A stretch of DNA of 63,729 nt, filler included, from Platydemus manokwari (lineage: Eukaryota), in NCBI GenBank assembly GCA_037951405.1. It is 6 parts of 6 records of this genome, joined end to end, with 100 filler letters (N's around TTAATTAATTAA, not from the genome) between each part and the next. Parts side by side here need not be neighbours in the genome. Positions count along the whole stretch, not along the records: positions 18,426 to 29,948 come from JBBMOY010628880.1; 5 more parts are not named here. One strand, written 5' to 3'. Positions 3,784-53,090 of this stretch are shown piece after piece (within the stretch, counting starts at the first letter, position 1; each line of letters starts with the position of its first letter). Both the position numbers and the translations under genes were made by a program. The notes under the pieces were generated by a model. The model saw nothing but the letters and a program-made list of their open reading frames with translations. It was not told the origin of the DNA and made no database searches.

Positions 3784-3965
3784 TGTGAGGATTTTTAAAT
3801 GCATTAAAATTATAAAAGATTTATAATTGGAATTTATATTCGAAAATAAAAATTATCAATTTTATTTATTTAAATAATTACTTAAAATAAATATTTTTTT
3901 AAAATAAATATTCTCCACGAGTTTGGCTTTTCATTTTCTTGCTTTATAAAATAGAGCGGTAAACA
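3784..3965 (+). mobile_element. Solo LTR of the TRIM-like family
   Basis: Starts TGTGAGGATTTTTAAATG and ends ...ctttataaaatagagcggtaaaca. Flanks taggc/caggt are a degenerate 5-bp TSD. Confidence 0.6.
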
Positions 3966-18425: not shown

Positions 18426-19637
18426 ATTTTTTTCTATTTCTTCATAAATGAAACATTGTCGACGAACAAGAAAAATTAATTAATTAAGGTTAATTCATAA
18501 ATACTTAACACGCTAAACGCTTTCTCACTTAATTTTGGTTTTTCTTATCATTTTCATTTCCATTCACTCATTCATTGAATATAAGAAAACAAACTCAAAT
18601 CTTTCTATATATTTTATATTGTAAGACTACTACTACCATACTAATGTCCAGTAATATTATTTACCAAAACCATTTATTAATGACAGCATTATATAAACAA
18701 ATTTATCAAAAATTTATAAATAAACACGAGTGCACTCGAAACGAGAATGAACTGAATAATTTGTTGTCGATTTTTATTAAATGAATTTCTACCTTATCGT
18801 GGAAATTAATAAAAACAAACCCGAGCAGTTTAAAATTTATAATTATCGAAACATTTTATAAATCATTTTGATAGAAACAACTATATTGAAGATGAGAAAT
18901 CAAATAAGCTATTAAAGAAAATTTGATGTTTATCTACTTTATTTCCAAACATTCATTGATTTTTAAATTGATTATTTATATTTTAGATATTCATGAACAA
19001 CATTCGTTAGATTTATTCGTTTAATGTTAAACTATATCGAAAATTATAATCAGTATGATATTAGGCTATCAAAATTGATTTTCACAGTTGTAAATTTTTC
19101 AATTGTGAATTAATCTGTCTAGAATGTTTAATTATTCAACAAAATACAGCGTCAAAATGAATACGGGAGCAATTTAGACGAGTAGAGAAACCTCGGGTGA
19201 AAATAAATATTGGATTCAATGAAATAATAAAAAAAATATTTTAAAATCAGATGATGATGAACTTTTTAAACAATTATATCATAAAAATAATATTAATATA
19301 CAATATTTTATATAACGATAGTTTACAGACCAAGGGCCAAAGTGATAAAATTTAATCATCGATATTTCCTTTTAATTTCAATTTTCTTGAAACCTACAAC
19401 CAAATTTGATACCAATAAATTATAAACTCAATAAATACCAATTAACAATTTCTTAGTCGCCGACTACAATTAAAATGTCGTAATGAATGTATATTAGCTA
19501 AAATTTCACAGTGTAAATAATTTATTACTGCCAATTAGTTATAATATTAAACGTGAACATTTATATTACCGTGTCTAATATCTTCGATAGACAATACCTA
19601 TGATTTAAGGTAACTTTTAAAAAAGCATTATCCTTAC

Positions 19638-20151
19638 TGTGAGGATTTAAAAATCTAAATTTGAAGTATTATCAATTAATTTCAGAAGATATTAATTTGT
19701 TTAAATTATTGCTTTTAAATAAATAATTTGGTTTTGTGACTTCTCTGAGTTACTTTTCAATTCGTGTTTTTAAAATAGTAGCGCCTTACATGGCTATCAT
19801 GTATTTGTATTCGATTCTGAAAAGGTCTATGAAATGGAAGTATATGAAAGAAGGAAGACATGTAAAAGATGACTAAACAAAATTTAGAAAATAAAGAATA
19901 TTCTATGAGCATTTTAAAAAAAGAAAGAAGAAATAAAGTTTTCATTCAGGTAAATAAGTGGAGAATTGAATACGGAAATAATTAGGAATCCATAAAAGAT
20001 CAAGAAATGGAGATGTGAGGATTTAAAATTTTATGAATGAATGTCAAAAGATATTGTTTTGTTTAAATTATTGTTTTAAATAAATAATTTGATTTCGTTA
20101 CCTCCCAGTAACTTTTCAATGCATGTTTTTTAAAATAGTAGCATCATAACT
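19638..20151 (+). mobile_element. Full-length TRIM-like miniature LTR retrotransposon (copy A)
   Basis: Direct repeats 19638-19790 (TGTGAGGATTTAA...tagtagcgccttACA) and 20014-20151. TGG-initiated PBS-like site at 19791, PPT aagaaatggaga at 20002-20013, 223-bp non-coding core, flanks cttac/gttac. Confidence 0.8.
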
Positions 20152-21873
20152 GTTACTAAAAGGATTTTCTTTAATAATTTCCAATTTAGTAGCCTAATAT
20201 ATAAATATGATATAAGTAATTACTTATGATACGAGTTACTTATAATGATCTAATGCTTGTCCGTTTTTTTTATCAATTCTTCGTATTTAATGTTTTAAAT
20301 ACAAGGCAGATATGAATCATCTCAGAGAAAAAAAATTATTAGTTTAGAAGCTGCACTTTATCGATATTTATAATATCGTCAACAAATAAATCTAAAAATA
20401 GTAATTACGTCACAATAAATTCGAAAATGAGCAAATTGCGAATTATTAAATTTATTTTAGGACATAGCAAACCTCTTAAATCATATTTCTAGCACGACTC
20501 ACTTTACAAAGTTGCATCCAAGTAAACTTGATTTAAATAATGAATAAGTAAACAAAGGTGAAATCTTTGAACTCTTTTTGTGTAACTTTTTTACATGATC
20601 GATATTTCGGAAGAAATAGACTCACATAAAAAGACAAATTAATTCGACGATGGTCACAAATCATTCTTTACGTATTATATATAGATTTCAGGCATGTCTA
20701 TTATATAATCGTAATGGCATATTTCATCCATCGAATATAAAGGTCAAATTAATTCTTTACTGTCTATTATTTATCAGTAAATAATATGATTTGGAAATTC
20801 CTCTGAAATACGATTTGAATCACGTGACTGTGCTTCATTCAGTCAACCCTAAATTAATAATTATATAATATTTGTTACAATAATTATTTAAAACTATAAG
20901 CATTCAAACTTAACCATTTAATATTTATCATAACAATTTACCATTAAAATATGAAGTCCTGATCAATACATACACGATATGGATTTAAGAAATCAATAAT
21001 AACTATTATTAATACAATAATATATAAATTTTCTTGCTTTAACAAGTCTATTGAAAACATAAGCAAGTGTCACATGCGATCAATATTAGATAATCAATTT
21101 ATTGATATATCTCATTATTAGAATCGACACTTGATCAAAAATGCCAATTTCCATTGTTTTTACAAAAGATTATCAAAATAAAAAAATAAGACATTGACTT
21201 ATTAGAAAAGTAAAAAATAATGGTCTTAAAAATTTTATAATTATTTCAATAAAATTAGATGAAGTTTGGCCGGTAATGAAAATCAAAAAGACAAATCAAT
21301 AATGTTAATTATTATCGGTGATTGGAACAAATGTTATAAATTCGGTTAACTTCATTTATTTCATTAAATATTTCACTTGATATTCACATTCAAATATATA
21401 TGGAACGTGATCGATATTAACTCCAATCAATATATTTACCAGTGAGTCAATAATGTCAATAAAACTTATATTCTATTTGATTAAGAAAATTGATAAATTT
21501 CATTTTCTAAATATATATATATATATTTTTCAACTAGACTACAGCCACGTTCCGAAAACGAAATTTGAAGCATGATAAGCATATATAATCGAGCACAGAC
21601 TGACAGCCACTATGTGAAACACTAATAACTGAAATCAACCAATAGAATGCAACTATGAAGCACACATGCACAACAGGATCACATAATTGCTAGTCAATCG
21701 CTAAAATATTACCAGCACGATTCATTGGTCAAATTATAGCGTAAAGTAAAAAAAATAAGTGAAAAGCAAGCCAGAGTCCCAAATCCGCTAATAAATTGAG
21801 CACATGTATATATGATTATAAAATAGCACTTCAAAGAGTTTAAAACGAAAAACGGAACACATCAATCACAAAG

Positions 21874-23968
21874 TTAATATGAAAATCGTAATTTTGGACT
21901 ATAGCCAAGTTTATCCAAGTTAGGAATACAAGCAAAATTTATCATTGGAGGTGGGCCACACATGAATACCATGGTGTCATCGGAAGGAGCAAATAAATGC
22001 TCCTTAATCATGGTATCGGTGACGAAACCCTCACTATATTGCCAATCTGGAACGAAAATTACATTGGCAATGAAAATACCAAGCTAACTTTCAGTTGGTC
22101 GGTCAACTGTGTACCATAAATTGAGTTGACTTCGATTTTTATCACGATATTCCTCCAATTCATCGCGAAGTAGAATATCGTCCTCGGTCTAACACCATAG
22201 CAGTATTTTAAATAGCCTTTAAATTTTAGTTTTACCTGATTAGCAAATAAAAGGCTCAATTTTGTTTTATCATTGGGATCATTCAGTACAGCTCGAATCA
22301 GCTGGAGCATTGGTGTAATACCAGTACCACCAGCTATCATATTAACCTTCTTTACCTGATGTAAAACTGGTTGACTCTTTTTATCGGCCCTAATTGCAAA
22401 AACACCTACGATAAAATCATGGAAAAATGTCGAAATAATGTTAAGATAATGGCTACCTTTGCCATTGTAAACTAATAAACCTGAAGGACCTCTGACATCG
22501 ATGTAATCACCAATTTCCATATTTTCCAAATATTGACTCATTTTGCCACCATCTGGAAATTTAGGATGAACGTTTTTTCTGTAAACCTAATGAATGAACA
22601 TTATATCAAACAGCACATGAGTTATAAATCATTGGAAAAGTTATAAATCGCTGTCTGATAAATCTTGAAATGTAAGCCTATGCCTAGTTTTATGATTAAT
22701 TTTTCGAATTTTAAGACACCAAATATAATCGAGAAAACTATTAAATACGGTATAGCATTGAAACAAGAGTAAATCAATAAAATCTTCCAACAAATTAATT
22801 ATTGATCTTATCAAAATAATCCAAAGGTAATCCAAATATTAGACTAACAGTGATCAGTTCAATCAAAATTAATCCACTTAAACGTCTAATCATGTTCATA
22901 TCATTGACCATAGTGACATTTCAAGGCTTAAAATTAATTCTGTCAGCTGTTATAAATTTATAAAATTCAATTTATAATCAATAAATATATGTGCAAAAAT
23001 ATTTCAAAACTTGGTCATAAAATCGAACAAGATTTTCACCAAACCAAATAATCATTTTTATTCCATAATTTTTGTAAACAAATAATTCTAGAATAATAAT
23101 TTTTCTGAGAAATAAAATCTATAAATTCGACCACCACATTAATATTTGTTATCGATTAATCAATAATTCTAAAATTCTAAAGTATTCTTCACTTATCTCA
23201 TTAAAAATAAATATCAATATCTTTTGTGTTCGAAATATACACACGCACACTACTACATAGAAAAATTAACAATGTCAATATAGAACGGTCGGGGTAGAAA
23301 ATATAAGCACAAAATGAATCAATTAAAACAAAATGATTGAATTAAAAATCAAGCATTTTACATAGACAGCTTGAAAAATCAACAATTATAAAAAATCTAA
23401 CCTTGATAACTAAATCCATATAACCTTTGACATTATCGTTTGTTACAGGAGTGTATGGTCTAACTACTATTTGCCCATCAATTTTATAACTCAAGTAAAT
23501 ATGTTGTCCTGAATATTTGATCCCAATTAACTACGATTATATATATGAATAATTATATATAAACCAAAGATATATAATTCAATTTATTTTTAATTTTTTC
23601 ATATTTTAAATTAAATCAAAAATTGTTATAATAAAATCAGACATTACCGATTGGCAATCCTAGAAAATGATCTGGTGATGGTAACATAAATCGAAATTTG
23701 ATTGTGTCGTGACTTATTATCTTAAAAAAGATTAAATATTAATAGTTAAAATATCTATATACTTCTTTATCCACTAATTTAAGCGGGTATTTAACTGATG
23801 AATCAACTAATGTGACTTTTTTCTTTTTACTTGCAAAGATGTAGTAAAGAGCCGCAGTTGACACAGCAATGACTCCTAAACCTATACTTATAGGGATTGC
23901 CTATATAAAATATTTTAAAATAAGAATAATAATTTAAAATTCAATACCAATATTAATTTGCTAGACAT
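21874..23968 (-). CDS. CYB5R: NADH-cytochrome b5 reductase (CYB5R1/2/3 family), 8 exons, 303 aa
   Basis: Exons (minus): 23968-23948, 23900-23763, 23720-23648, 23508-23402, 22586-22457, 22405-22236, 22188-22089, 22046-21874. All introns are GT-AG and the join is open (912 nt). Motifs: N-terminal membrane anchor [37 protein letters not shown] (FAD), [27 protein letters not shown] (NADH), MCGPPPMI, ending LRFSY*. Confidence 0.96.
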
Positions 23969-24920
23969 TTTTATAAAACAGATTTTATTTTTTGGATTTA
24001 AATATGCAAATTTTAGAAATATACTTAAACAAGACAATTTTAAACTAAATTCAGTTGATTTTCGATTTTAATTTAAATTGTTTAAATAAAAATAATACTT
24101 TCAATAATGGAAAAAATTTAATTTGTAAATTAAAAATTCTACTAGTTTTATCACTATAATCGAGAAAATTGTTATTACAGATTTAAAATAGTATAAAAGT
24201 ATGAAACACGCGATCAATCAATAGATCTCTTAATATCTATTTATAACGAAATAAATAGCATCTTAACCATCTCTAATGCATAACAAATCGGGTCTCTTTA
24301 TGAAACAAATTAATAAAATGCTACAATACAAAACAATCACTAAAAAGCCTCTAGATATAACTAAGCTGAATCAATATAACTGTCCCATTATTTACAACTA
24401 TAAAACCATGCTTCAATTTCAATAAAATATGATTAAATGCTCAATAATAAACAACAGGGCTCATTCCGGATAAAAGATCAAACATTACAAAAATTGAAGA
24501 ATCGTTGAAAATTGATTAATTACTTTCAAATAATAATTTCCTAACAAAAGCTAAAATTTAACAAATGACAATTAGTAGTAAAAATTTACACCAAGATATC
24601 AGTAATACATCTCAATTTGCAATCACTTAAAATCGTGTTGAAACTTCGAATCAACAACATACCATGACGCATAAATCACAGAAAACAAGCAGGCAAAATT
24701 ATTATGGAATAATAATATGACTGTACATATAAATCTAAAATCTGAATTGTCATAGAAAATCGTACTGGCCGCCACCAAAACGCAGTAGAGTCGATTTATT
24801 CGCTTTTGAATTGGATATCTGTCTAAAATTATGAAGAGCAACAAACTAAATGGCATTATCAGTGGTATAGAAACATGGTATAAGAACATCAGCACCAAAC
24901 AAACTAAACTCGTACATTCA

Positions 24921-25330
24921 TCATCTTATTGAAAAATCTGTATAAAAATATAAAAAGAAGCTACAACTGATAGAAATAATAAGTCTTAGTTGATATCTAT
25001 TCAACTCAAATATTGAGACTGCGTAATTGTTACTAGTATTAGTATTATTGTTATAATTATGAAAATAATTAATATCGTTATTGCTGACAGAACTGTTGAT
25101 TGATCCAAAAAAAGAATGGATTAATTTCTTAATACATTTCTTTTGTTGACGAGCAGTACATGAATCCTCAGGTGATTTCGAAGACATATTTGAGGATATC
25201 TGGTCTATACTGTACATTTGAGTTTCATGTAGGAATAGCTCAGAATAACAACAATAAGTAAAAGGCATATCAGCTCCACATTTTGATTTCTCATTTAATC
25301 GATACCGAGCACTGTGATGATAATGACTTT
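24921..25330 (-). CDS. Probable terminal coding exon of an unidentified Cys-containing protein with a hydrophobic C-terminal tail
   Basis: Good acceptor ttattttattttcatcAG, then a 410-nt open phase-1 exon: (x)SHYHHSARYRLNEKSKCGADMPFTYCCYSELF...SCTARQQKKC...NNTNTSNN...RYQLRLIISISCSFFLYFYTDFSIR*. Upstream exons not located. Confidence 0.5.
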
Positions 25331-28300
25331 CTGATGAAAATAAAATAATAATATTATTATTAAATTTTAAAATATTTCATTACTTAATAATAGAAATAAT
25401 AATATTATATATAATTTGCTTTTCGTATGATTTATTTCAAAAATTATGTAGCTATTTATACTATTGATAATTAAAAGTAATGTAATTTTGAACAAACAAA
25501 ATAAAAAATAAACTTAATCAAAAATTAAGCTTGAATATAACAAGGTTTTTTCATCTAGAAATATCATTCAAAAACGAGAGTCGACTTTTATTCTAACCAT
25601 TCGATTGTTTTGAATTTACCTACATACAAATAAAATGTGTTTTTTAAATATTCTACCAGTAGAATGAGATGTCTTATATTCTCGCTAATGTGGTGACAAA
25701 TTTCTTTCACATAAGAATTTGATGATTTTTTATCTGATATTTTCTTGAATGCCACTCAGTAAGAGGATTTGAAAGTTGATGTTGTAAATTTATAACAAGC
25801 CATCCTTAACATTTTTAATTTATTACATGTTTAAACCAATTGACAAACGATTTTTTAATAAAAGAAAACCGAAAGTATTGACAGTCAATCCTCATAAAAT
25901 AAAAATAACAAATCTATATTCAGAAGTGCTTCGTTGTAAAAAGATTTCACAGAAATTTACAACGTAAACAATAACATGATAGTAATCTTTATTCATATTT
26001 AAAATAAACTCAGAGATTTTAGAAATCGAAATAAAATTTTTTTAAAAATAAATCGTTAATTATTAAATTAGAAAGTGAAAACCATCGTAAAAAAACAATA
26101 TATTTTACAAATACTTTTCAATCATATTAAAAATTAAGAATCAAATATTTAATTTTTAAAGTGACTATCAATTATTTTTAAAGTAACCTTTTAAATGACA
26201 ATTACTGAAATTACCGTTACTATAGATGTTTGTATAATTAGAACTCCACTTCAAATAAATAATGACGATAACACAGTTAAGAATTGAAAAATAGAAAGTT
26301 TCGATATCAATATGTAGAAATGTTAAAACATTTATTAAATGGGCGAACCCATATATATAATATAAGCTGTCAAGTTTGAAATAAATAAAATCATTACATT
26401 TCTTTCAAAATCCATCGTAAAATCAAAGTATTTACATTCCATAACCCCATCATACGGAAAATAATTGTTATCAGCAAAGAATATAAAAGATATTAAATGA
26501 TCTATTGACACAACGAAATTCCATTACATTTTAATTGCAAATTCAACAATCATAAATAAATGTAGACATATGGAAGGTTCAACCGAATTTTAATCATTTC
26601 TATTGATAATATCAATGGATTTTTTTGTCATTATTTAAAACAAAAAAATTCAATAAATATTTATTTTTAATAAGGAAAGGTAATGTAATGAGCTAAGTCA
26701 CGGAACATATTATCCAACAAAAACCTATTACCAATTCAAAAAAGTGTTAGTTATCAAATATGGGCACCATAGTAACAGATTCTATACAAAATAAAAATTC
26801 TAAATAAATCTCTATTTTCACAATATCATTTTAAACAAATATATATATATGTTCAAAAATCAAATCGAAATAATTTTTAAATATCAAAAATTGAATTTTG
26901 CAATCAATATAAAACAAAAATAATATCTAAAAAAATATCAATTGGAATTAACAAAACGATCTGACTTTATAAAATATCCAAAGAGAAAATGATTAATGAA
27001 ATTATTGCTCATTTGTATATTTGTCAAGTAATCAAATTATAGCTCCAAGAAAATCGTCATAAAATGACATACACAGCCAAGATAAATAAATAGGTGTTAA
27101 CAAACAACTAGTCAAATCGCCTAATTATTATTAATTATTATTAACAATCCGATCAGTAAATGAAATAAATTTTCTTTCAATGAATAATGGGGATAGCATT
27201 GAAACGATAGCATTATAAATAGTTTATTAATTATATATATTTATCCGCTTAAAAACCATTTTACAGAAATGCCTTGTCAAAAATACGGGTCATATTAAAT
27301 ATAAATGTATGAGAAGAAGATTTGAAGACTTGTTTGCCATAAATAGGTGATAAGTATAAAATACATTTCACGTGTTTCCGTTATTGAGCTTATTTCATGA
27401 AAGATTATATAACAAATGAAACCGAATACAAAGCAAATAATCGATGGCAGAACAGTTCCATTGAGATAATAGACGGAAAGCTAGCGATTTTTAACACTAT
27501 ACGAGTGAATCGTTCTTTTCTTTTGATTGACCTACCGATCTGAGTAAATAAAATTTAAAGTTTTATAATTACAAAAATAAATATAAAATATAAAGATGAA
27601 ATCAAGTGGGAAAATTGTCTAATTAATAAATAATTAATTTGAAAAAATACAAGGATGTACGTTGGAAACTTTTACAGTTTTACGCGCACAGAAACCGATT
27701 ACAAAACATAAAAATTTCAGATAATAAATCCGGACTTGTTTTAATCGATATTCTTATAAGAATCATGATTCTTGTATTTTAAAATCGAAGCTTTAACGAC
27801 TATTTGGTTTTTCATTTTTATCAAAGTCTAGCACTCTGTGAATTTCGATGTAGTTTCATGTTTTATGAAATTATATAAACACAAAATTCAATACAACTTA
27901 TAATAAAATATTCAATTTTTATCCCTATAAAAAATAACAAAAACAGCTCCATTTTTCACAATGAATTACTGATGCCGCGAATATTAGTGTTTAAAAACTA
28001 AAGAGTTAATTATTTGTCTTTTAATCACTAGAGTGGTGCCCGATGTGCACTGTAACTAATTACAAATATATCGACAATTTTAGACATTTACCGACTCTGA
28101 TAGAAACTGGACACACATAACACATAGATTTGATATTTCAAATGACCGATAATCGGGTTTGACACACATTTATTGATTTTTCTTCTTAATAATATTTACT
28201 TTATATATCTTGTCTATATTTGTTGATTGCAGATTTATATTTATTAACAAAATATTTTTTTCAGACTATAAAGGAAATTGTAATCAAACAAAAAAGATAA

Positions 28301-29195
28301 CCGAATTGAAATAAATTGTAATTAAAATTATTATTAAGCAATAAATTGTATTGGGGTCGAAATAAATAAATGTGAATAAGATTAATAATAATATTCAATA
28401 TTATGAAAATAATCATACAACATTATTATCTGTTAGAATAAATTTCATTAGAATATTTTGAAATTATTATTTCATAATATTTCCACATATTCATATATTC
28501 AATCTTTATCATGAAAATTCCTACATGAAAAATAAATAAATAAAATAAATGTGATTTCATTGAATATTATTTTTGATGCAAACCATATTGTTTTGATGAT
28601 AACGAATCTTATATTTCAGTCATATAAATCAATGTGAAGTCTCGTCATCATTCAAATCACAAGTTAATTTTTCTCACACCAAAGGCTTATATAATATTTA
28701 TGATACCGATTTGAATATATTTTTATCATGTCGAGTAATTTTCAAAGAAATATAATACTGACCAATTATTTAATGAGTATGAACCATCTATAAAAACATT
28801 GTGAAAATGTATTTTTACCCAACAAACTCCATTATATGGAATGAGAAACAATAAAATGCGTTATTCATTATTATTATCATTATTTTCTTTATCTGTAATT
28901 TTAAAAATAAATAACAGCTTCAAAAGTATTTATTTATAATTAATAATAATACAAAACTTGTAAATTATTATGATCTTTTCATAAAACAAGAAAAAGCGAA
29001 TTACCAGATATTAAACCTTTTTGGAAATTAAAATAGTTTCTGTTAAAGATATAATCAATCAATTAATAACATAACGAAATTAGCCAATATAATAAAGAAA
29101 ATCGAATAATATCCCTTGCTAATACACAACAAATTGTAATTTTCATTTATTCAAATCTATTTCAGGATCGGGTTCTGGGTGATTTTAGTTTAAAT

Positions 29196-29598
29196 AAGTG
29201 ATTCCCAATCTTTACGGGCGTACCGCCTCCTTTTCAGAATAAATATTACTTAGCATCCCCCAACTAACCCACACCACTTTTTTTAAACTTTTAGTAGAAA
29301 TTTATAAAAAAACTTAATTTTACTATCTTTTTCATTAAATATATTAAAAAGATATATAAATTAGGTAGAGACAATCCATTTTGAAAGTAAGAACATATTT
29401 ATTGCATTTAGAATAGATTTTAATACAAAAACTCGAAATTACGTTGTTTAAAGACAAATTAAGCATTTTGAGCAAACGAGATATATCAAAATTTTTAATA
29501 GTCATTTTCTTACATTCTTATATCATTATCCCCCTAAATGAGCTTGTATTCACCACCGATCCTGCGGATCCTTGCAGCGCCCACTTTAGAAATCCATG
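29196..29598. mobile_element. ~400-bp hAT (Buster-type) MITE, copy 1
   Basis: Homologous end to end with 48965-49388. Ends aagtgattcccaa / ccactttagaaatccatg. Perfect 8-bp TSD GTTTAAAT (29188-29195, 29599-29606). Confidence 0.88.
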
Positions 29599-29779
29599 GT
29601 TTAAATAATAATTAATTTCAAATCTAATTTCATAAAATTTACAAAATTCATTTCTATTAAAAAAAATTAAATTAACGATTTAATCTGTTTGAATATTCTG
29701 ATCCAATATATTTTCTTAAATAATTTTCGATTCGTATTTCACACCCACACTCACCCACCTACCCACCCACACACACATC

Positions 29780-29948
29780 TATATATAAAGGTAGAAAAAA
29801 TATATTTTTATATATAGATACATATCTGGAGAATCCAATATGATATAATCACGAATACACAGAAAATCAAAGATTTTAAAGGAGGAAGTCAGCGGATTTT
29901 AAAATGAATTAAAATTAAAAAGATTTATATTCAGAATTTAAATAGAAC
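29780..29948 (+). mobile_element. TRIM-like family, partial copy (3' core + PPT + start of 3' LTR), cut by the gap
   Basis: gaatacacagaaaatcaaagattttaaaggaggaag matches the core end of copy C. The next ~60 bp match the LTR start at 3784. Confidence 0.65.
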
Positions 29949-30788: not shown

Positions 30789-31330
30789 TATATTTAATAA
30801 TCATAGAACAATAATATTATAATGTTAAGTATTATTAATTGTATATATAATGCATATATAATTATATTAAAATATATAATTTGGTGTCGTGACTTTTCAG
30901 TTCGTTTTCAATCCATGTCTTATAAAAATTTATCAGCTTACATAGGGACCAACTCATTCGGAATCAATTCTGAGAAGAGCAATGACTGAACATTTTGGGG
31001 GAAAAGGAGGAAGATATTCAGAAAACATTAAAGAAGATGTAGAGAATATATAATAAATATATAAAGAAGGTGTAGAGAAGATATAAAAAAGATAGAAGAA
31101 TTAGAGATTTTTATGTAGATAAAAATGTAGAGTATTCGATACAATGTCAATTAAGAATACAAAGAAAATCAAAGATTTTAAAGACAAGGAACATGAGAAT
31201 TTTTAAAGATTAGATACAGATTCCATATATTTATTTTATTCATTTGTTTCGATAATTCTATTTAAACACATAATTTAGTATGATGACTTTTTAATTCATA
31301 TTTAATACATATCTTATAAAATAGCTTACA
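30789..31330 (+). mobile_element. Full-length TRIM-like element (copy C)
   Basis: 5' LTR ends ...cagcttACA at 30942, followed by PBS-like tagggaccaa, purine-rich core to 31191, PPT aaagacaaggaa, and 3' LTR 31192-31330 ending atagcttACA. Possible TSD aaaat/aaaat; the 5' boundary is less certain. Confidence 0.72.
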
Positions 31331-35699: not shown

Positions 35700-35795
35700 A
35701 TTATGGTTTAAATTAATGTAATTAAATATAATTTTTATGACGTAACTTTTCAGTTCGTTTCAAATGCGTGGTTTATAAAATAGTAGAGGATTACA
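35700..35795 (+). mobile_element. 3' fragment of the TRIM-family LTR
   Basis: gacgtaacttttcagttcgtttcaaatgcgtggtttataaaatagtagaggattACA matches the family LTR end. Confidence 0.65.
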
Positions 35796-45567: not shown

Positions 45568-45700
45568 TGTAAATATTTTATAATGATGATGTTGATGATG
45601 AATTTTATTTGTCTAGACAATTGTTACTCAAGTCTAATTTTGTGTCGTGATTTTCCAAGTAGTTTCCAAAGAGTTCTTTATAAATCATTAGCGGCTTACA
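45568..45700 (+). mobile_element. Solo LTR of the TRIM-like family
   Basis: TGTaaatattttataatga ... tgtgtcgtgattttccaagt...ttagcggcttACA. Flanks gttat/attat (4/5 TSD). Confidence 0.65.
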
Positions 45701-52925: not shown

Positions 52926-53090
52926 AGTGAGATATTTTCAATGAATCACATTTTTAATTCTAATTTAATTCTTATTTTATATGAAATCATATTTATATAA
53001 AATTAAATGTATTAGTTTAAGTATATATTTGGTGCCTTGATTTTTAAGTTCGTTTTCAATGGGTGGTTTTTAAAATCGTAGCGGCTAACA
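52926..53090 (+). mobile_element. Solo LTR of the TRIM-like family with perfect TSD
   Basis: (a)GTGAGatattttcaatgaat ... gttcgttttcaatgggtggtttttaaaatcgtagcggctaACA. Perfect 5-bp TSD ATAAT (52921-52925, 53091-53095). Confidence 0.78.

What the first reader, a model, noticed from the sequence alone, without database searches (positions are those of the whole stretch)
19638..20151. High-copy TRIM-like miniature LTR retrotransposon family (8 loci in 64 kb)
Seen: ~135-180 bp direct repeats that begin TGTGAGGATTT and end AAAATAGTAGCGGCTTACA (TG...CA). They enclose a 223-249 bp non-coding, strongly A/G-skewed core that starts with TGG (PBS) and ends in a polypurine tract. Full copies lie at 19638-20151 and 30789-31330, partial copies at ~2560-2875, 29780-29948 and 35700-35795, and solo LTRs at 3784-3965, 45568-45700 and 52926-53090. 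TSDs are 5 bp (ATAAT perfect; cttac/gttac and gttat/attat 4/5). Established: this LTR-PBS-short core-PPT-LTR layout defines TRIMs, which are common in plants but reported from few animals (e.g. ta-TRIM of taeniid tapeworms, expressed in stem cells). Inference: this is an abundant, old (LTR pairs visibly diverged), non-autonomous family that may be undescribed in this lineage.
Basis: partly seen in the sequence, partly recalled or inferred. Interest (0 to 1): 0.85.

Follow-up and report, generated by a model that had tools for sequence, protein, structure and literature searches.

The report
Decayed miniature LTR retrotransposon (TRIM-like) copy
A 514-base non-coding element with two about 150-base direct repeats and the landmarks of a miniature LTR retrotransposon really is there, but it is an old dead copy of a kind already known from several animal groups, and its claimed high copy number could not be checked.

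Summary
The full copy at 19638-20151 is real. Two direct repeats, 19638-19790 (153 nt) and 20014-20151 (138 nt), share 113 of 128 aligned bases (K2P 0.127, z 18.6 against shuffles). They enclose a 223-nt non-coding core that is 67% purine.

The landmarks of an LTR element sit where they should. Both repeats begin at the same TG. The 5' repeat ends in CA and is followed at once by TGG. The 20 nt before the 3' repeat are 17/20 purines.

The weak points are three. The 3' tip of the 3' repeat has decayed. The 5-bp target duplication (CTTAC/GTTAC) depends on the register chosen. The tRNA match of the putative primer site could not be tested.

The 'partial copy' at the piece's edge (29776-29943) aligns across the core/LTR junction at only 68% identity, which is marginal.

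The claims of eight loci, a fixed core length and family-wide TSDs lie outside my piece, and no accessible collection holds this genome, so 'high-copy family' remains untested.

TRIMs are already described in Hymenoptera, taeniid cestodes and bivalves, with related forms in fish and nemerteans. This is at most a new member of a known kind. The host is an AT-rich bilaterian of unresolved lineage. Interest is low to moderate.

The parts
19633..19637 (+). possible left target-site duplication (CTTAC)
   Evidence: Read directly from the sequence. It matches 20152-20156 at 4/5, but only in one register, with chance 0.04-0.24. Weak.
19638..19790 (+). 5' LTR (terminal direct repeat), 153 nt, TG...CA
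   Evidence: Aligns to 20014-20142 with 113/128 identical, z 18.6. nhmmer E 2e-42. Homology starts sharply at TG. AATAAA at 19718 lies in the best-conserved block. No Rfam family at E<=1.
19791..20013 (+). non-coding internal domain, 223 nt, 67% purine
   Evidence: Composition and stops in all six frames, longest open stretch 51 codons. Unrelated to either flank.
19791..19808 (+). putative primer-binding site region, begins TGG directly after the LTR's CA
   Evidence: Read directly. TGG occurs at 0.6% of positions in the piece. Complementarity to a tRNA was not testable, because the piece holds no tRNA gene.
19994..20013 (+). polypurine tract (17 of 20 purines, ends GGAGA) abutting the 3' LTR
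   Evidence: Only 0.28% of 20-nt windows in the piece are this purine-rich.
20014..20151 (+). 3' LTR, about 138 nt; homology solid to 20142, 3' tip decayed, no terminal CA
20152..20156 (+). possible right target-site duplication (GTTAC), or the decayed LTR tip
   Evidence: The two readings cannot be told apart from this copy.
29776..29943 (+). possible second, 5'-truncated and strongly diverged copy (last ~100 nt of the core plus first ~55 nt of an LTR), cut by the edge of the piece
   Evidence: Local alignment 119/175 = 68%, collinear across the core/LTR junction. It is the top score among all windows of the piece, 110 against at most 95. nhmmer gives only E 0.24. Nothing upstream of it matches the 5' part of the element.

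Best explanation
The 514-bp stretch at 19638-20151 is an old, inactive copy of a small non-autonomous LTR retrotransposon with TRIM architecture. [quoted passage not shown]

The mechanism is inferred from what is established for LTR elements, not shown here. An RNA is transcribed from the 5' LTR to the polyadenylation signal in the 3' LTR; a conserved AATAAA sits in the best-kept block of both LTRs. That RNA is packaged and reverse-transcribed in trans by the Gag/Pol of an autonomous LTR element of the same genome. Minus-strand synthesis is primed by a tRNA at the PBS and plus-strand synthesis at the PPT. The partner's integrase then inserts the DNA through the TG...CA ends, making a short target duplication.

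This copy can no longer move. Its LTRs differ by about 12% plus four indels, and the 3' terminus is lost. It lies in intergenic DNA, 1.7 kb beyond the 3' end of a NADH-cytochrome b5 reductase gene on the opposite strand.

For: - The repeat pair is highly significant.
- Both repeats start at the same TG after unrelated upstream bases.
- CA|TGG lies at the end of the 5' repeat, and a 17/20 purine tract abuts the 3' repeat. Single-site frequencies in this piece are TG 0.045, CA 0.063, TGG 0.006 and such a purine window 0.003.
- The core has stops in all frames.
- Total length and LTR lengths fall inside the published TRIM definition: under 1000 bp with TDRs of 100-250 bp (PMC6934838).
- The flanks show no similarity to the LTR or the core, so it is not part of a tandem array or a simple tandem duplication.
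- A second, diverged stretch at the piece's edge is collinear across the core/LTR junction, and the contig ends inside it, as assemblies often do in repeats.
Against: - Only one solid copy was seen.
- The second copy is marginal (nhmmer E 0.24).
- The TSD is register-dependent.
- The 3' LTR lacks a terminal CA.
- The PBS is AT-rich and could not be matched to any tRNA, since the piece has no tRNA genes.
- No autonomous partner, no transcripts and no other genomic copies could be examined.
Confidence: 0.7

Rival explanations
1. It is a one-off, internally deleted remnant of an ordinary long LTR retrotransposon (gypsy, copia or BEL type), not a member of a family that propagates as a miniature element. 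The 223-nt core is then what is left of the two ends of a longer internal region.
For: Every feature seen here (LTRs, TGG, purine tract) is shared with autonomous elements. The possible second copy shares only the last ~100 nt of the core next to the LTR, and that region would also be kept in a long element. Nothing matches the 5' half of the core elsewhere in the piece.
Against: The piece shows no reverse transcriptase, integrase or gag remnant among its open stretches.
Confidence: 0.15
2. The two 'LTRs' are two independent insertions, 223 nt apart and in the same orientation, of a short interspersed repeat (a solo LTR, SINE or MITE-like unit). The core is ordinary host DNA.
For: A 12% difference between the two units is what two family members would show.
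Against: TGG directly after the first unit and a purine tract directly before the second would both be coincidences. The core's purine skew is in the top 0.5% of the piece. Neither unit has its own flanking duplication. The stretch at 29776-29943 links core and LTR in the same order.
Confidence: 0.08
3. It is a non-transposon local duplication: a ~150-nt segment copied a short distance downstream by replication or repair error.
For: Only one solid instance is visible to me.
Against: A tandem duplication would give two copies of the spacer as well, and neither flank resembles the core. The LTR landmarks are unexplained. The contig edge holds a probable second copy.
Confidence: 0.05

Closest known systems
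PbTRIM of ants (Zhou & Cahan 2012, PMC3532108)
   Same: Very similar dimensions: elements of 480-781 bp with LTRs of 152-184 bp, a non-coding internal domain with a PBS right after the 5' LTR and a ~15-nt PPT before the 3' LTR. It also inserts in AT-rich DNA and leaves many solo LTRs.
   Different: PbTRIM makes 4-bp TSDs (often ATAT) and has a PBS matched to tRNA-Leu, and many of its copies are young. Here the TSD, if real, is 5 bp, the PBS is unmatched and the copy is old. Sequence similarity could not be tested because no PbTRIM sequence was on hand.
ta-TRIM of taeniid cestodes (Koziol et al. 2015, PMC4558846)
   Same: A non-autonomous LTR element with a PBS and a PPT, many decayed copies, solo LTRs, and 4- or 5-bp TSDs depending on the species.
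   Different: For ta-TRIM there is evidence of expression, a candidate autonomous partner (lennie) and thousands of loci. None of these could be examined here.
biv-TRIM of bivalves (Satovic et al. 2019, PMC6934838)
   Same: A miniature LTR element in a spiralian animal, whose PPT ends in GGGGAGA. Here the tract ends in GGAGA.
   Different: biv-TRIM has 202-218 bp repeats, a core of only 77-80 bp and no recognisable PBS. Here the repeats are ~150 bp and the core 223 bp, starting with TGG.
Cassandra, Helenus and Ajax (TRIMs with a pol III promoter, 'TRIMp3'; Kojima 2024, PMC10886601)
   Same: Same overall TRIM layout and size range (311-1263 bp). Ajax makes 5-bp TSDs in nemerteans.
   Different: Those carry a 5S rRNA- or tRNA-derived sequence in the LTR. 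No Rfam family matches these LTRs even at E<=1, and ARAGORN finds nothing.

Membership tests
TRIM (terminal-repeat retrotransposon in miniature) | Two terminal direct repeats of about 100-250 bp | tested here: met
   153 and 138 nt, 113/128 identical, z 18.6.
TRIM (terminal-repeat retrotransposon in miniature) | Whole element shorter than about 1000 bp | tested here: met
   514 bp, 19638-20151.
TRIM (terminal-repeat retrotransposon in miniature) | Internal domain without coding capacity | tested here: met
   At least 3 stops in each of six frames, longest open stretch 51 codons.
TRIM (terminal-repeat retrotransposon in miniature) | LTRs end in TG...CA | tested here: inconclusive
   The 5' LTR has TG...CA. 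The 3' LTR has TG, but its 3' tip is decayed and ends ...AACT.
TRIM (terminal-repeat retrotransposon in miniature) | Primer-binding site complementary to the 3' end of a tRNA, directly after the 5' LTR | not testable with these tools
   TGG follows the CA at once. No tRNA gene of this genome is available, and the following bases are AT-rich, so no match can be scored.
TRIM (terminal-repeat retrotransposon in miniature) | Polypurine tract directly before the 3' LTR | tested here: met
   17/20 purines at 19994-20013. Only 0.28% of windows in the piece reach this.
TRIM (terminal-repeat retrotransposon in miniature) | 4-6 bp target-site duplication | tested here: inconclusive
   CTTAC/GTTAC is 4/5 in one register. 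Chance is 0.04 for one register and 0.24 over eight. An alternative alignment leaves no TSD.
TRIM (terminal-repeat retrotransposon in miniature) | A family: several dispersed copies sharing the same short internal domain, plus solo LTRs | tested here: inconclusive
   The piece holds one marginal partial copy.
TRIM (terminal-repeat retrotransposon in miniature) | Mobilised in trans by an autonomous LTR element with matching LTR ends, PBS and TSD length | not tested
   The 11.5-kb piece holds no LTR-retrotransposon coding remnant. The rest of the genome is unavailable.
Cassandra / Helenus / Ajax (TRIMp3) | 5S rRNA- or tRNA-derived pol III promoter sequence inside the LTR | tested here: not met
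   No Rfam match in the LTRs at E<=1 or at gathering score. No ARAGORN hit.

The most novel reading that the evidence does not exclude
The element is one of very many copies of a lineage-specific TRIM family in a poorly sampled, very AT-rich (about 24% G+C) bilaterian lineage. The family would be dense enough (several loci per 10-60 kb) to break assemblies and to scatter LTR promoters and polyadenylation signals next to genes, as ta-TRIM does in tapeworms.
Probability: 0.3. Interest if true: 0.4.

Novelty: new member of a known kind. Interest (0 to 1): 0.22.

Why it matters
It would also be useful for repeat-masking and annotating this genome, for dating bursts of LTR activity, and for asking which autonomous element drives it. 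It does not open a new mechanism. The copy seen here is dead, intergenic and shows no sign of being co-opted.

Tried and rejected
1. Laying the reads or contigs of the only holder run (X1) to count copies. Later searches used 19638-19905, 19945 onwards, or LTR-only patterns. Those places were used only in local alignments inside the closed scripting machine.

2. An RNA holder search found no RNA run, and only X1 holds the stretch.

3. A metagenome scan with an LTR start...end pattern gave one hit, L001. It is a coding bacterial contig with no further similarity, so a chance match. Viral contigs gave nothing, and prokaryotic genome contigs gave nothing.

4. A third, degraded LTR upstream was suggested because CCTTAC precedes the element and CCTTACA ends the LTR. 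It is rejected, with alignment z 0.5.

5. A tandem array or tandem duplication is rejected, because the core is unrelated to both flanks.

6. A small-RNA-derived LTR of the Cassandra type is rejected.

7. An exact look-up of the neighbouring ORF to reach a longer contig found nothing on record.

8. A literature search for the terminal motifs found no paper.

10. Host identification. The neighbouring cytochrome b5 reductase is about 85% identical, by my reading of the listed sequences, to one JGI transcript-like contig (P0001). It is only 64-71% identical to named animals, with molluscs on top and arthropods and vertebrates close behind. The lineage stays unresolved.

Full report
**What is in the sequence**

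The piece (18426-29948) is very AT-rich, with 21-37% G+C per 500 nt. At 19638-20151 two direct repeats are evident.
- The first is 19638-19790 (153 nt). The second is 20014-20151 (138 nt, with homology solid to 20142).
- Both begin with the same 15-mer, TGTGAGGATTTAAAA, and the bases just upstream of the two copies are unrelated. The 5' boundary therefore falls sharply at TG.
- A global alignment gives 113 identical of 128 aligned positions, with 6 transitions, 9 transversions and four gap events, for a K2P distance of 0.127.
- The local score is 167, against 46.9 +/- 6.4 for shuffles, a z of 18.6. An LTR profile finds only these two places in the piece, at E 2e-42 and 1e-36.

**Landmarks of an LTR element**

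- The first repeat ends ...AGCGCCTTACA and is followed at once by TGG.
- The 223 nt between the repeats (19791-20013) are 67% purine on the + strand, the 99.5th percentile of windows of that size in the piece.
- That core has at least three stops in each of the six frames.
- The last 20 nt of the core (19994-20013) are 17/20 purines and end in GGAGA, abutting the TG of the second repeat.
- In this piece TG occurs at 4.5% of positions, CA at 6.3% and TGG at 0.6%. A 20-nt window this purine-rich occurs at 0.28%.
- Even with a few registers of slack at each site, finding all four at the edges of a chance repeat is very unlikely.
- The orientation is + : the reverse strand would offer neither TGG nor a purine tract in the right places.
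- The best-conserved block of both repeats contains AATAAA (19718 and 20079), followed by a GT-rich stretch. I read this as a possible polyadenylation signal marking the R/U5 region. That is inference, and such motifs are common in AT-rich DNA.

**What is weak**

- The 3' tip of the second repeat is decayed (...AGCATCATAACT) and has no terminal CA.
- A global alignment instead pairs GTTAC with the TTACA tip of the LTR and inserts 7 nt before it. In that reading there is no TSD.
- A 4/5 match has a chance of 0.04 in one register and 0.24 over eight. This copy therefore says nothing firm about TSDs.
- The putative primer-binding site (TGGCTATCATG...) is AT-rich. The piece holds no tRNA genes and I have no tRNA set for this organism, so complementarity could not be scored.

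**Alternatives inside the piece**

- CCTTAC precedes the element and CCTTACA ends the LTR, so I tested for a third, degraded LTR upstream. The alignment is at chance level, z 0.5.
- The core is unrelated to either flank (z -2.1 and -0.1), and the LTR is unrelated to the downstream flank (z 0.7). That excludes a tandem array and a plain tandem duplication.
- No Rfam family matches the LTRs at gathering score or at E<=1. This is therefore not a Cassandra, Helenus or Ajax type of element with a small-RNA-derived promoter.

**The 'partial copy' at the edge of the piece**

- Aligned as a whole with the LTRs it does not match.
- A local alignment does pair 29776-29943 with 19910-20068, that is, the last ~100 nt of the core plus the first ~55 nt of the 3' LTR. 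It is collinear across the junction, at 119/175 = 68%.
- Against mononucleotide shuffles this is z 7.5. Against real windows of the same piece it is the top score, 110, where the best of 248 other windows scores 95 and the 95th percentile is 82.
- nhmmer, which corrects for composition, gives only E 0.24.
- I take it as a probable, strongly decayed, 5'-truncated copy. It is preceded by a CACCC-like microsatellite (29740-29779) and cut by the contig end.
- It supports a link between the core's 3' part and the LTR. It cannot show that the family has a fixed short core.

**Family-level claims**

- The other six loci lie outside my piece.
- Only one public run (X1, kept as contigs) holds the stretch, and no RNA run does.
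The tool itself says this filter also trips by chance. I kept those places out of every later search.
- A start...end LTR pattern found one match in JGI metagenomes, but that contig is bacterial coding DNA with no other similarity.
- Viral and prokaryotic genome collections gave nothing. The neighbouring ORF is not on record in the gene-position index. No paper prints the terminal motifs.
- Copy number, modal core length and TSD statistics therefore remain untested.

**Context and host**

- On the minus strand, exons at about 23900-21877 encode a NADH-cytochrome b5 reductase. PDB relatives score up to E 3e-30, and the FAD_binding_6 and NAD_binding_1 domains are found.
- One 51-nt intron is read through in frame in the ORF 22059-22541.
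- The element lies 1.7 kb beyond the gene's stop, on the other strand, in intergenic DNA.
- The closest protein is a JGI contig product, P0001, which is intron-less and about 85% identical in the exons by my reading of the two sequences.
- Named animals reach only 64-71% identity to P0001, with molluscs on top and arthropods, hemichordates and vertebrates close behind.
- The host is therefore a bilaterian animal of a poorly sampled lineage. I cannot say more.

**Comparison with what is known**

- The published definition of a TRIM has these parts: under 1000 bp, terminal direct repeats of 100-250 bp, and an internal domain that starts with a PBS and ends with a PPT and has no coding capacity (PMC6934838).
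- That definition is met for length, repeats, PPT and lack of coding capacity. It is open for PBS, TSD and family structure.
- In dimensions the closest is PbTRIM of ants: 480-781 bp, LTRs of 152-184 bp, insertion in AT-rich DNA, 4-bp TSDs and a tRNA-Leu PBS (PMC3532108).
- Outside plants, TRIMs are reported from hymenopteran insects, taeniid cestodes and bivalves. Helenus is known in fish, oyster and wasp, and Ajax in nemerteans (PMC10886601; PMC4558846).
- A further animal family would be a new member of a known kind.

**Verdict**

- One real, old, dead TRIM-like LTR element, plus a probable second fragment.
- The retrotransposon reading is well supported, at about 0.8 for 'LTR-retrotransposon-derived non-coding element'.
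- The 'abundant TRIM family with a fixed core' reading is plausible but untested, at about 0.5.
- I give 0.7 to the combined statement as worded. Interest is low to moderate.

Noticed in passing
window 21877-23900 (- strand): A NADH-cytochrome b5 reductase gene in several exons. The ORF 22059-22541 reads in frame through a 51-nt intron. The closest relative is an unnamed JGI transcript-like contig (P0001), while named animals are only 64-71% identical to P0001, so the host lineage looks poorly sampled.
   Followed up: partly
window 29740-29779: A CACCC/CA-type microsatellite directly upstream of the probable partial element copy. Homology to the element starts right after it.
   Followed up: no
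window 19809-19818: About 20 nt after the TGG stands GTATTCGATTC, which resembles the complement of a tRNA T-loop region (GGATTCGAACC, from general knowledge of tRNAs) but is 2 nt out of register. It could be a trace of longer tRNA complementarity or chance. Rfam and ARAGORN see no tRNA-like fold here.
   Followed up: partly
window 19632-19637 and 19784-19790: The six bases before the element (CCTTAC) repeat the LTR's own 3' tip (CCTTACA). An upstream third LTR was tested and not found, so the match is unexplained. It may be chance or a target preference.
   Followed up: yes
window 24626-25376 (- strand): Two long open stretches (100 and 151 codons) upstream of the reductase gene have no Pfam match. 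They lie in a region of slightly raised G+C and strong AT skew, and may be untranslated or non-coding.
   Followed up: partly
L001 1715-1866: The only metagenome match to the LTR start...end pattern lies inside coding DNA of an AT-rich bacterial contig. This shows that 22 specified bases are too few for a collection of this size.
   Followed up: yes
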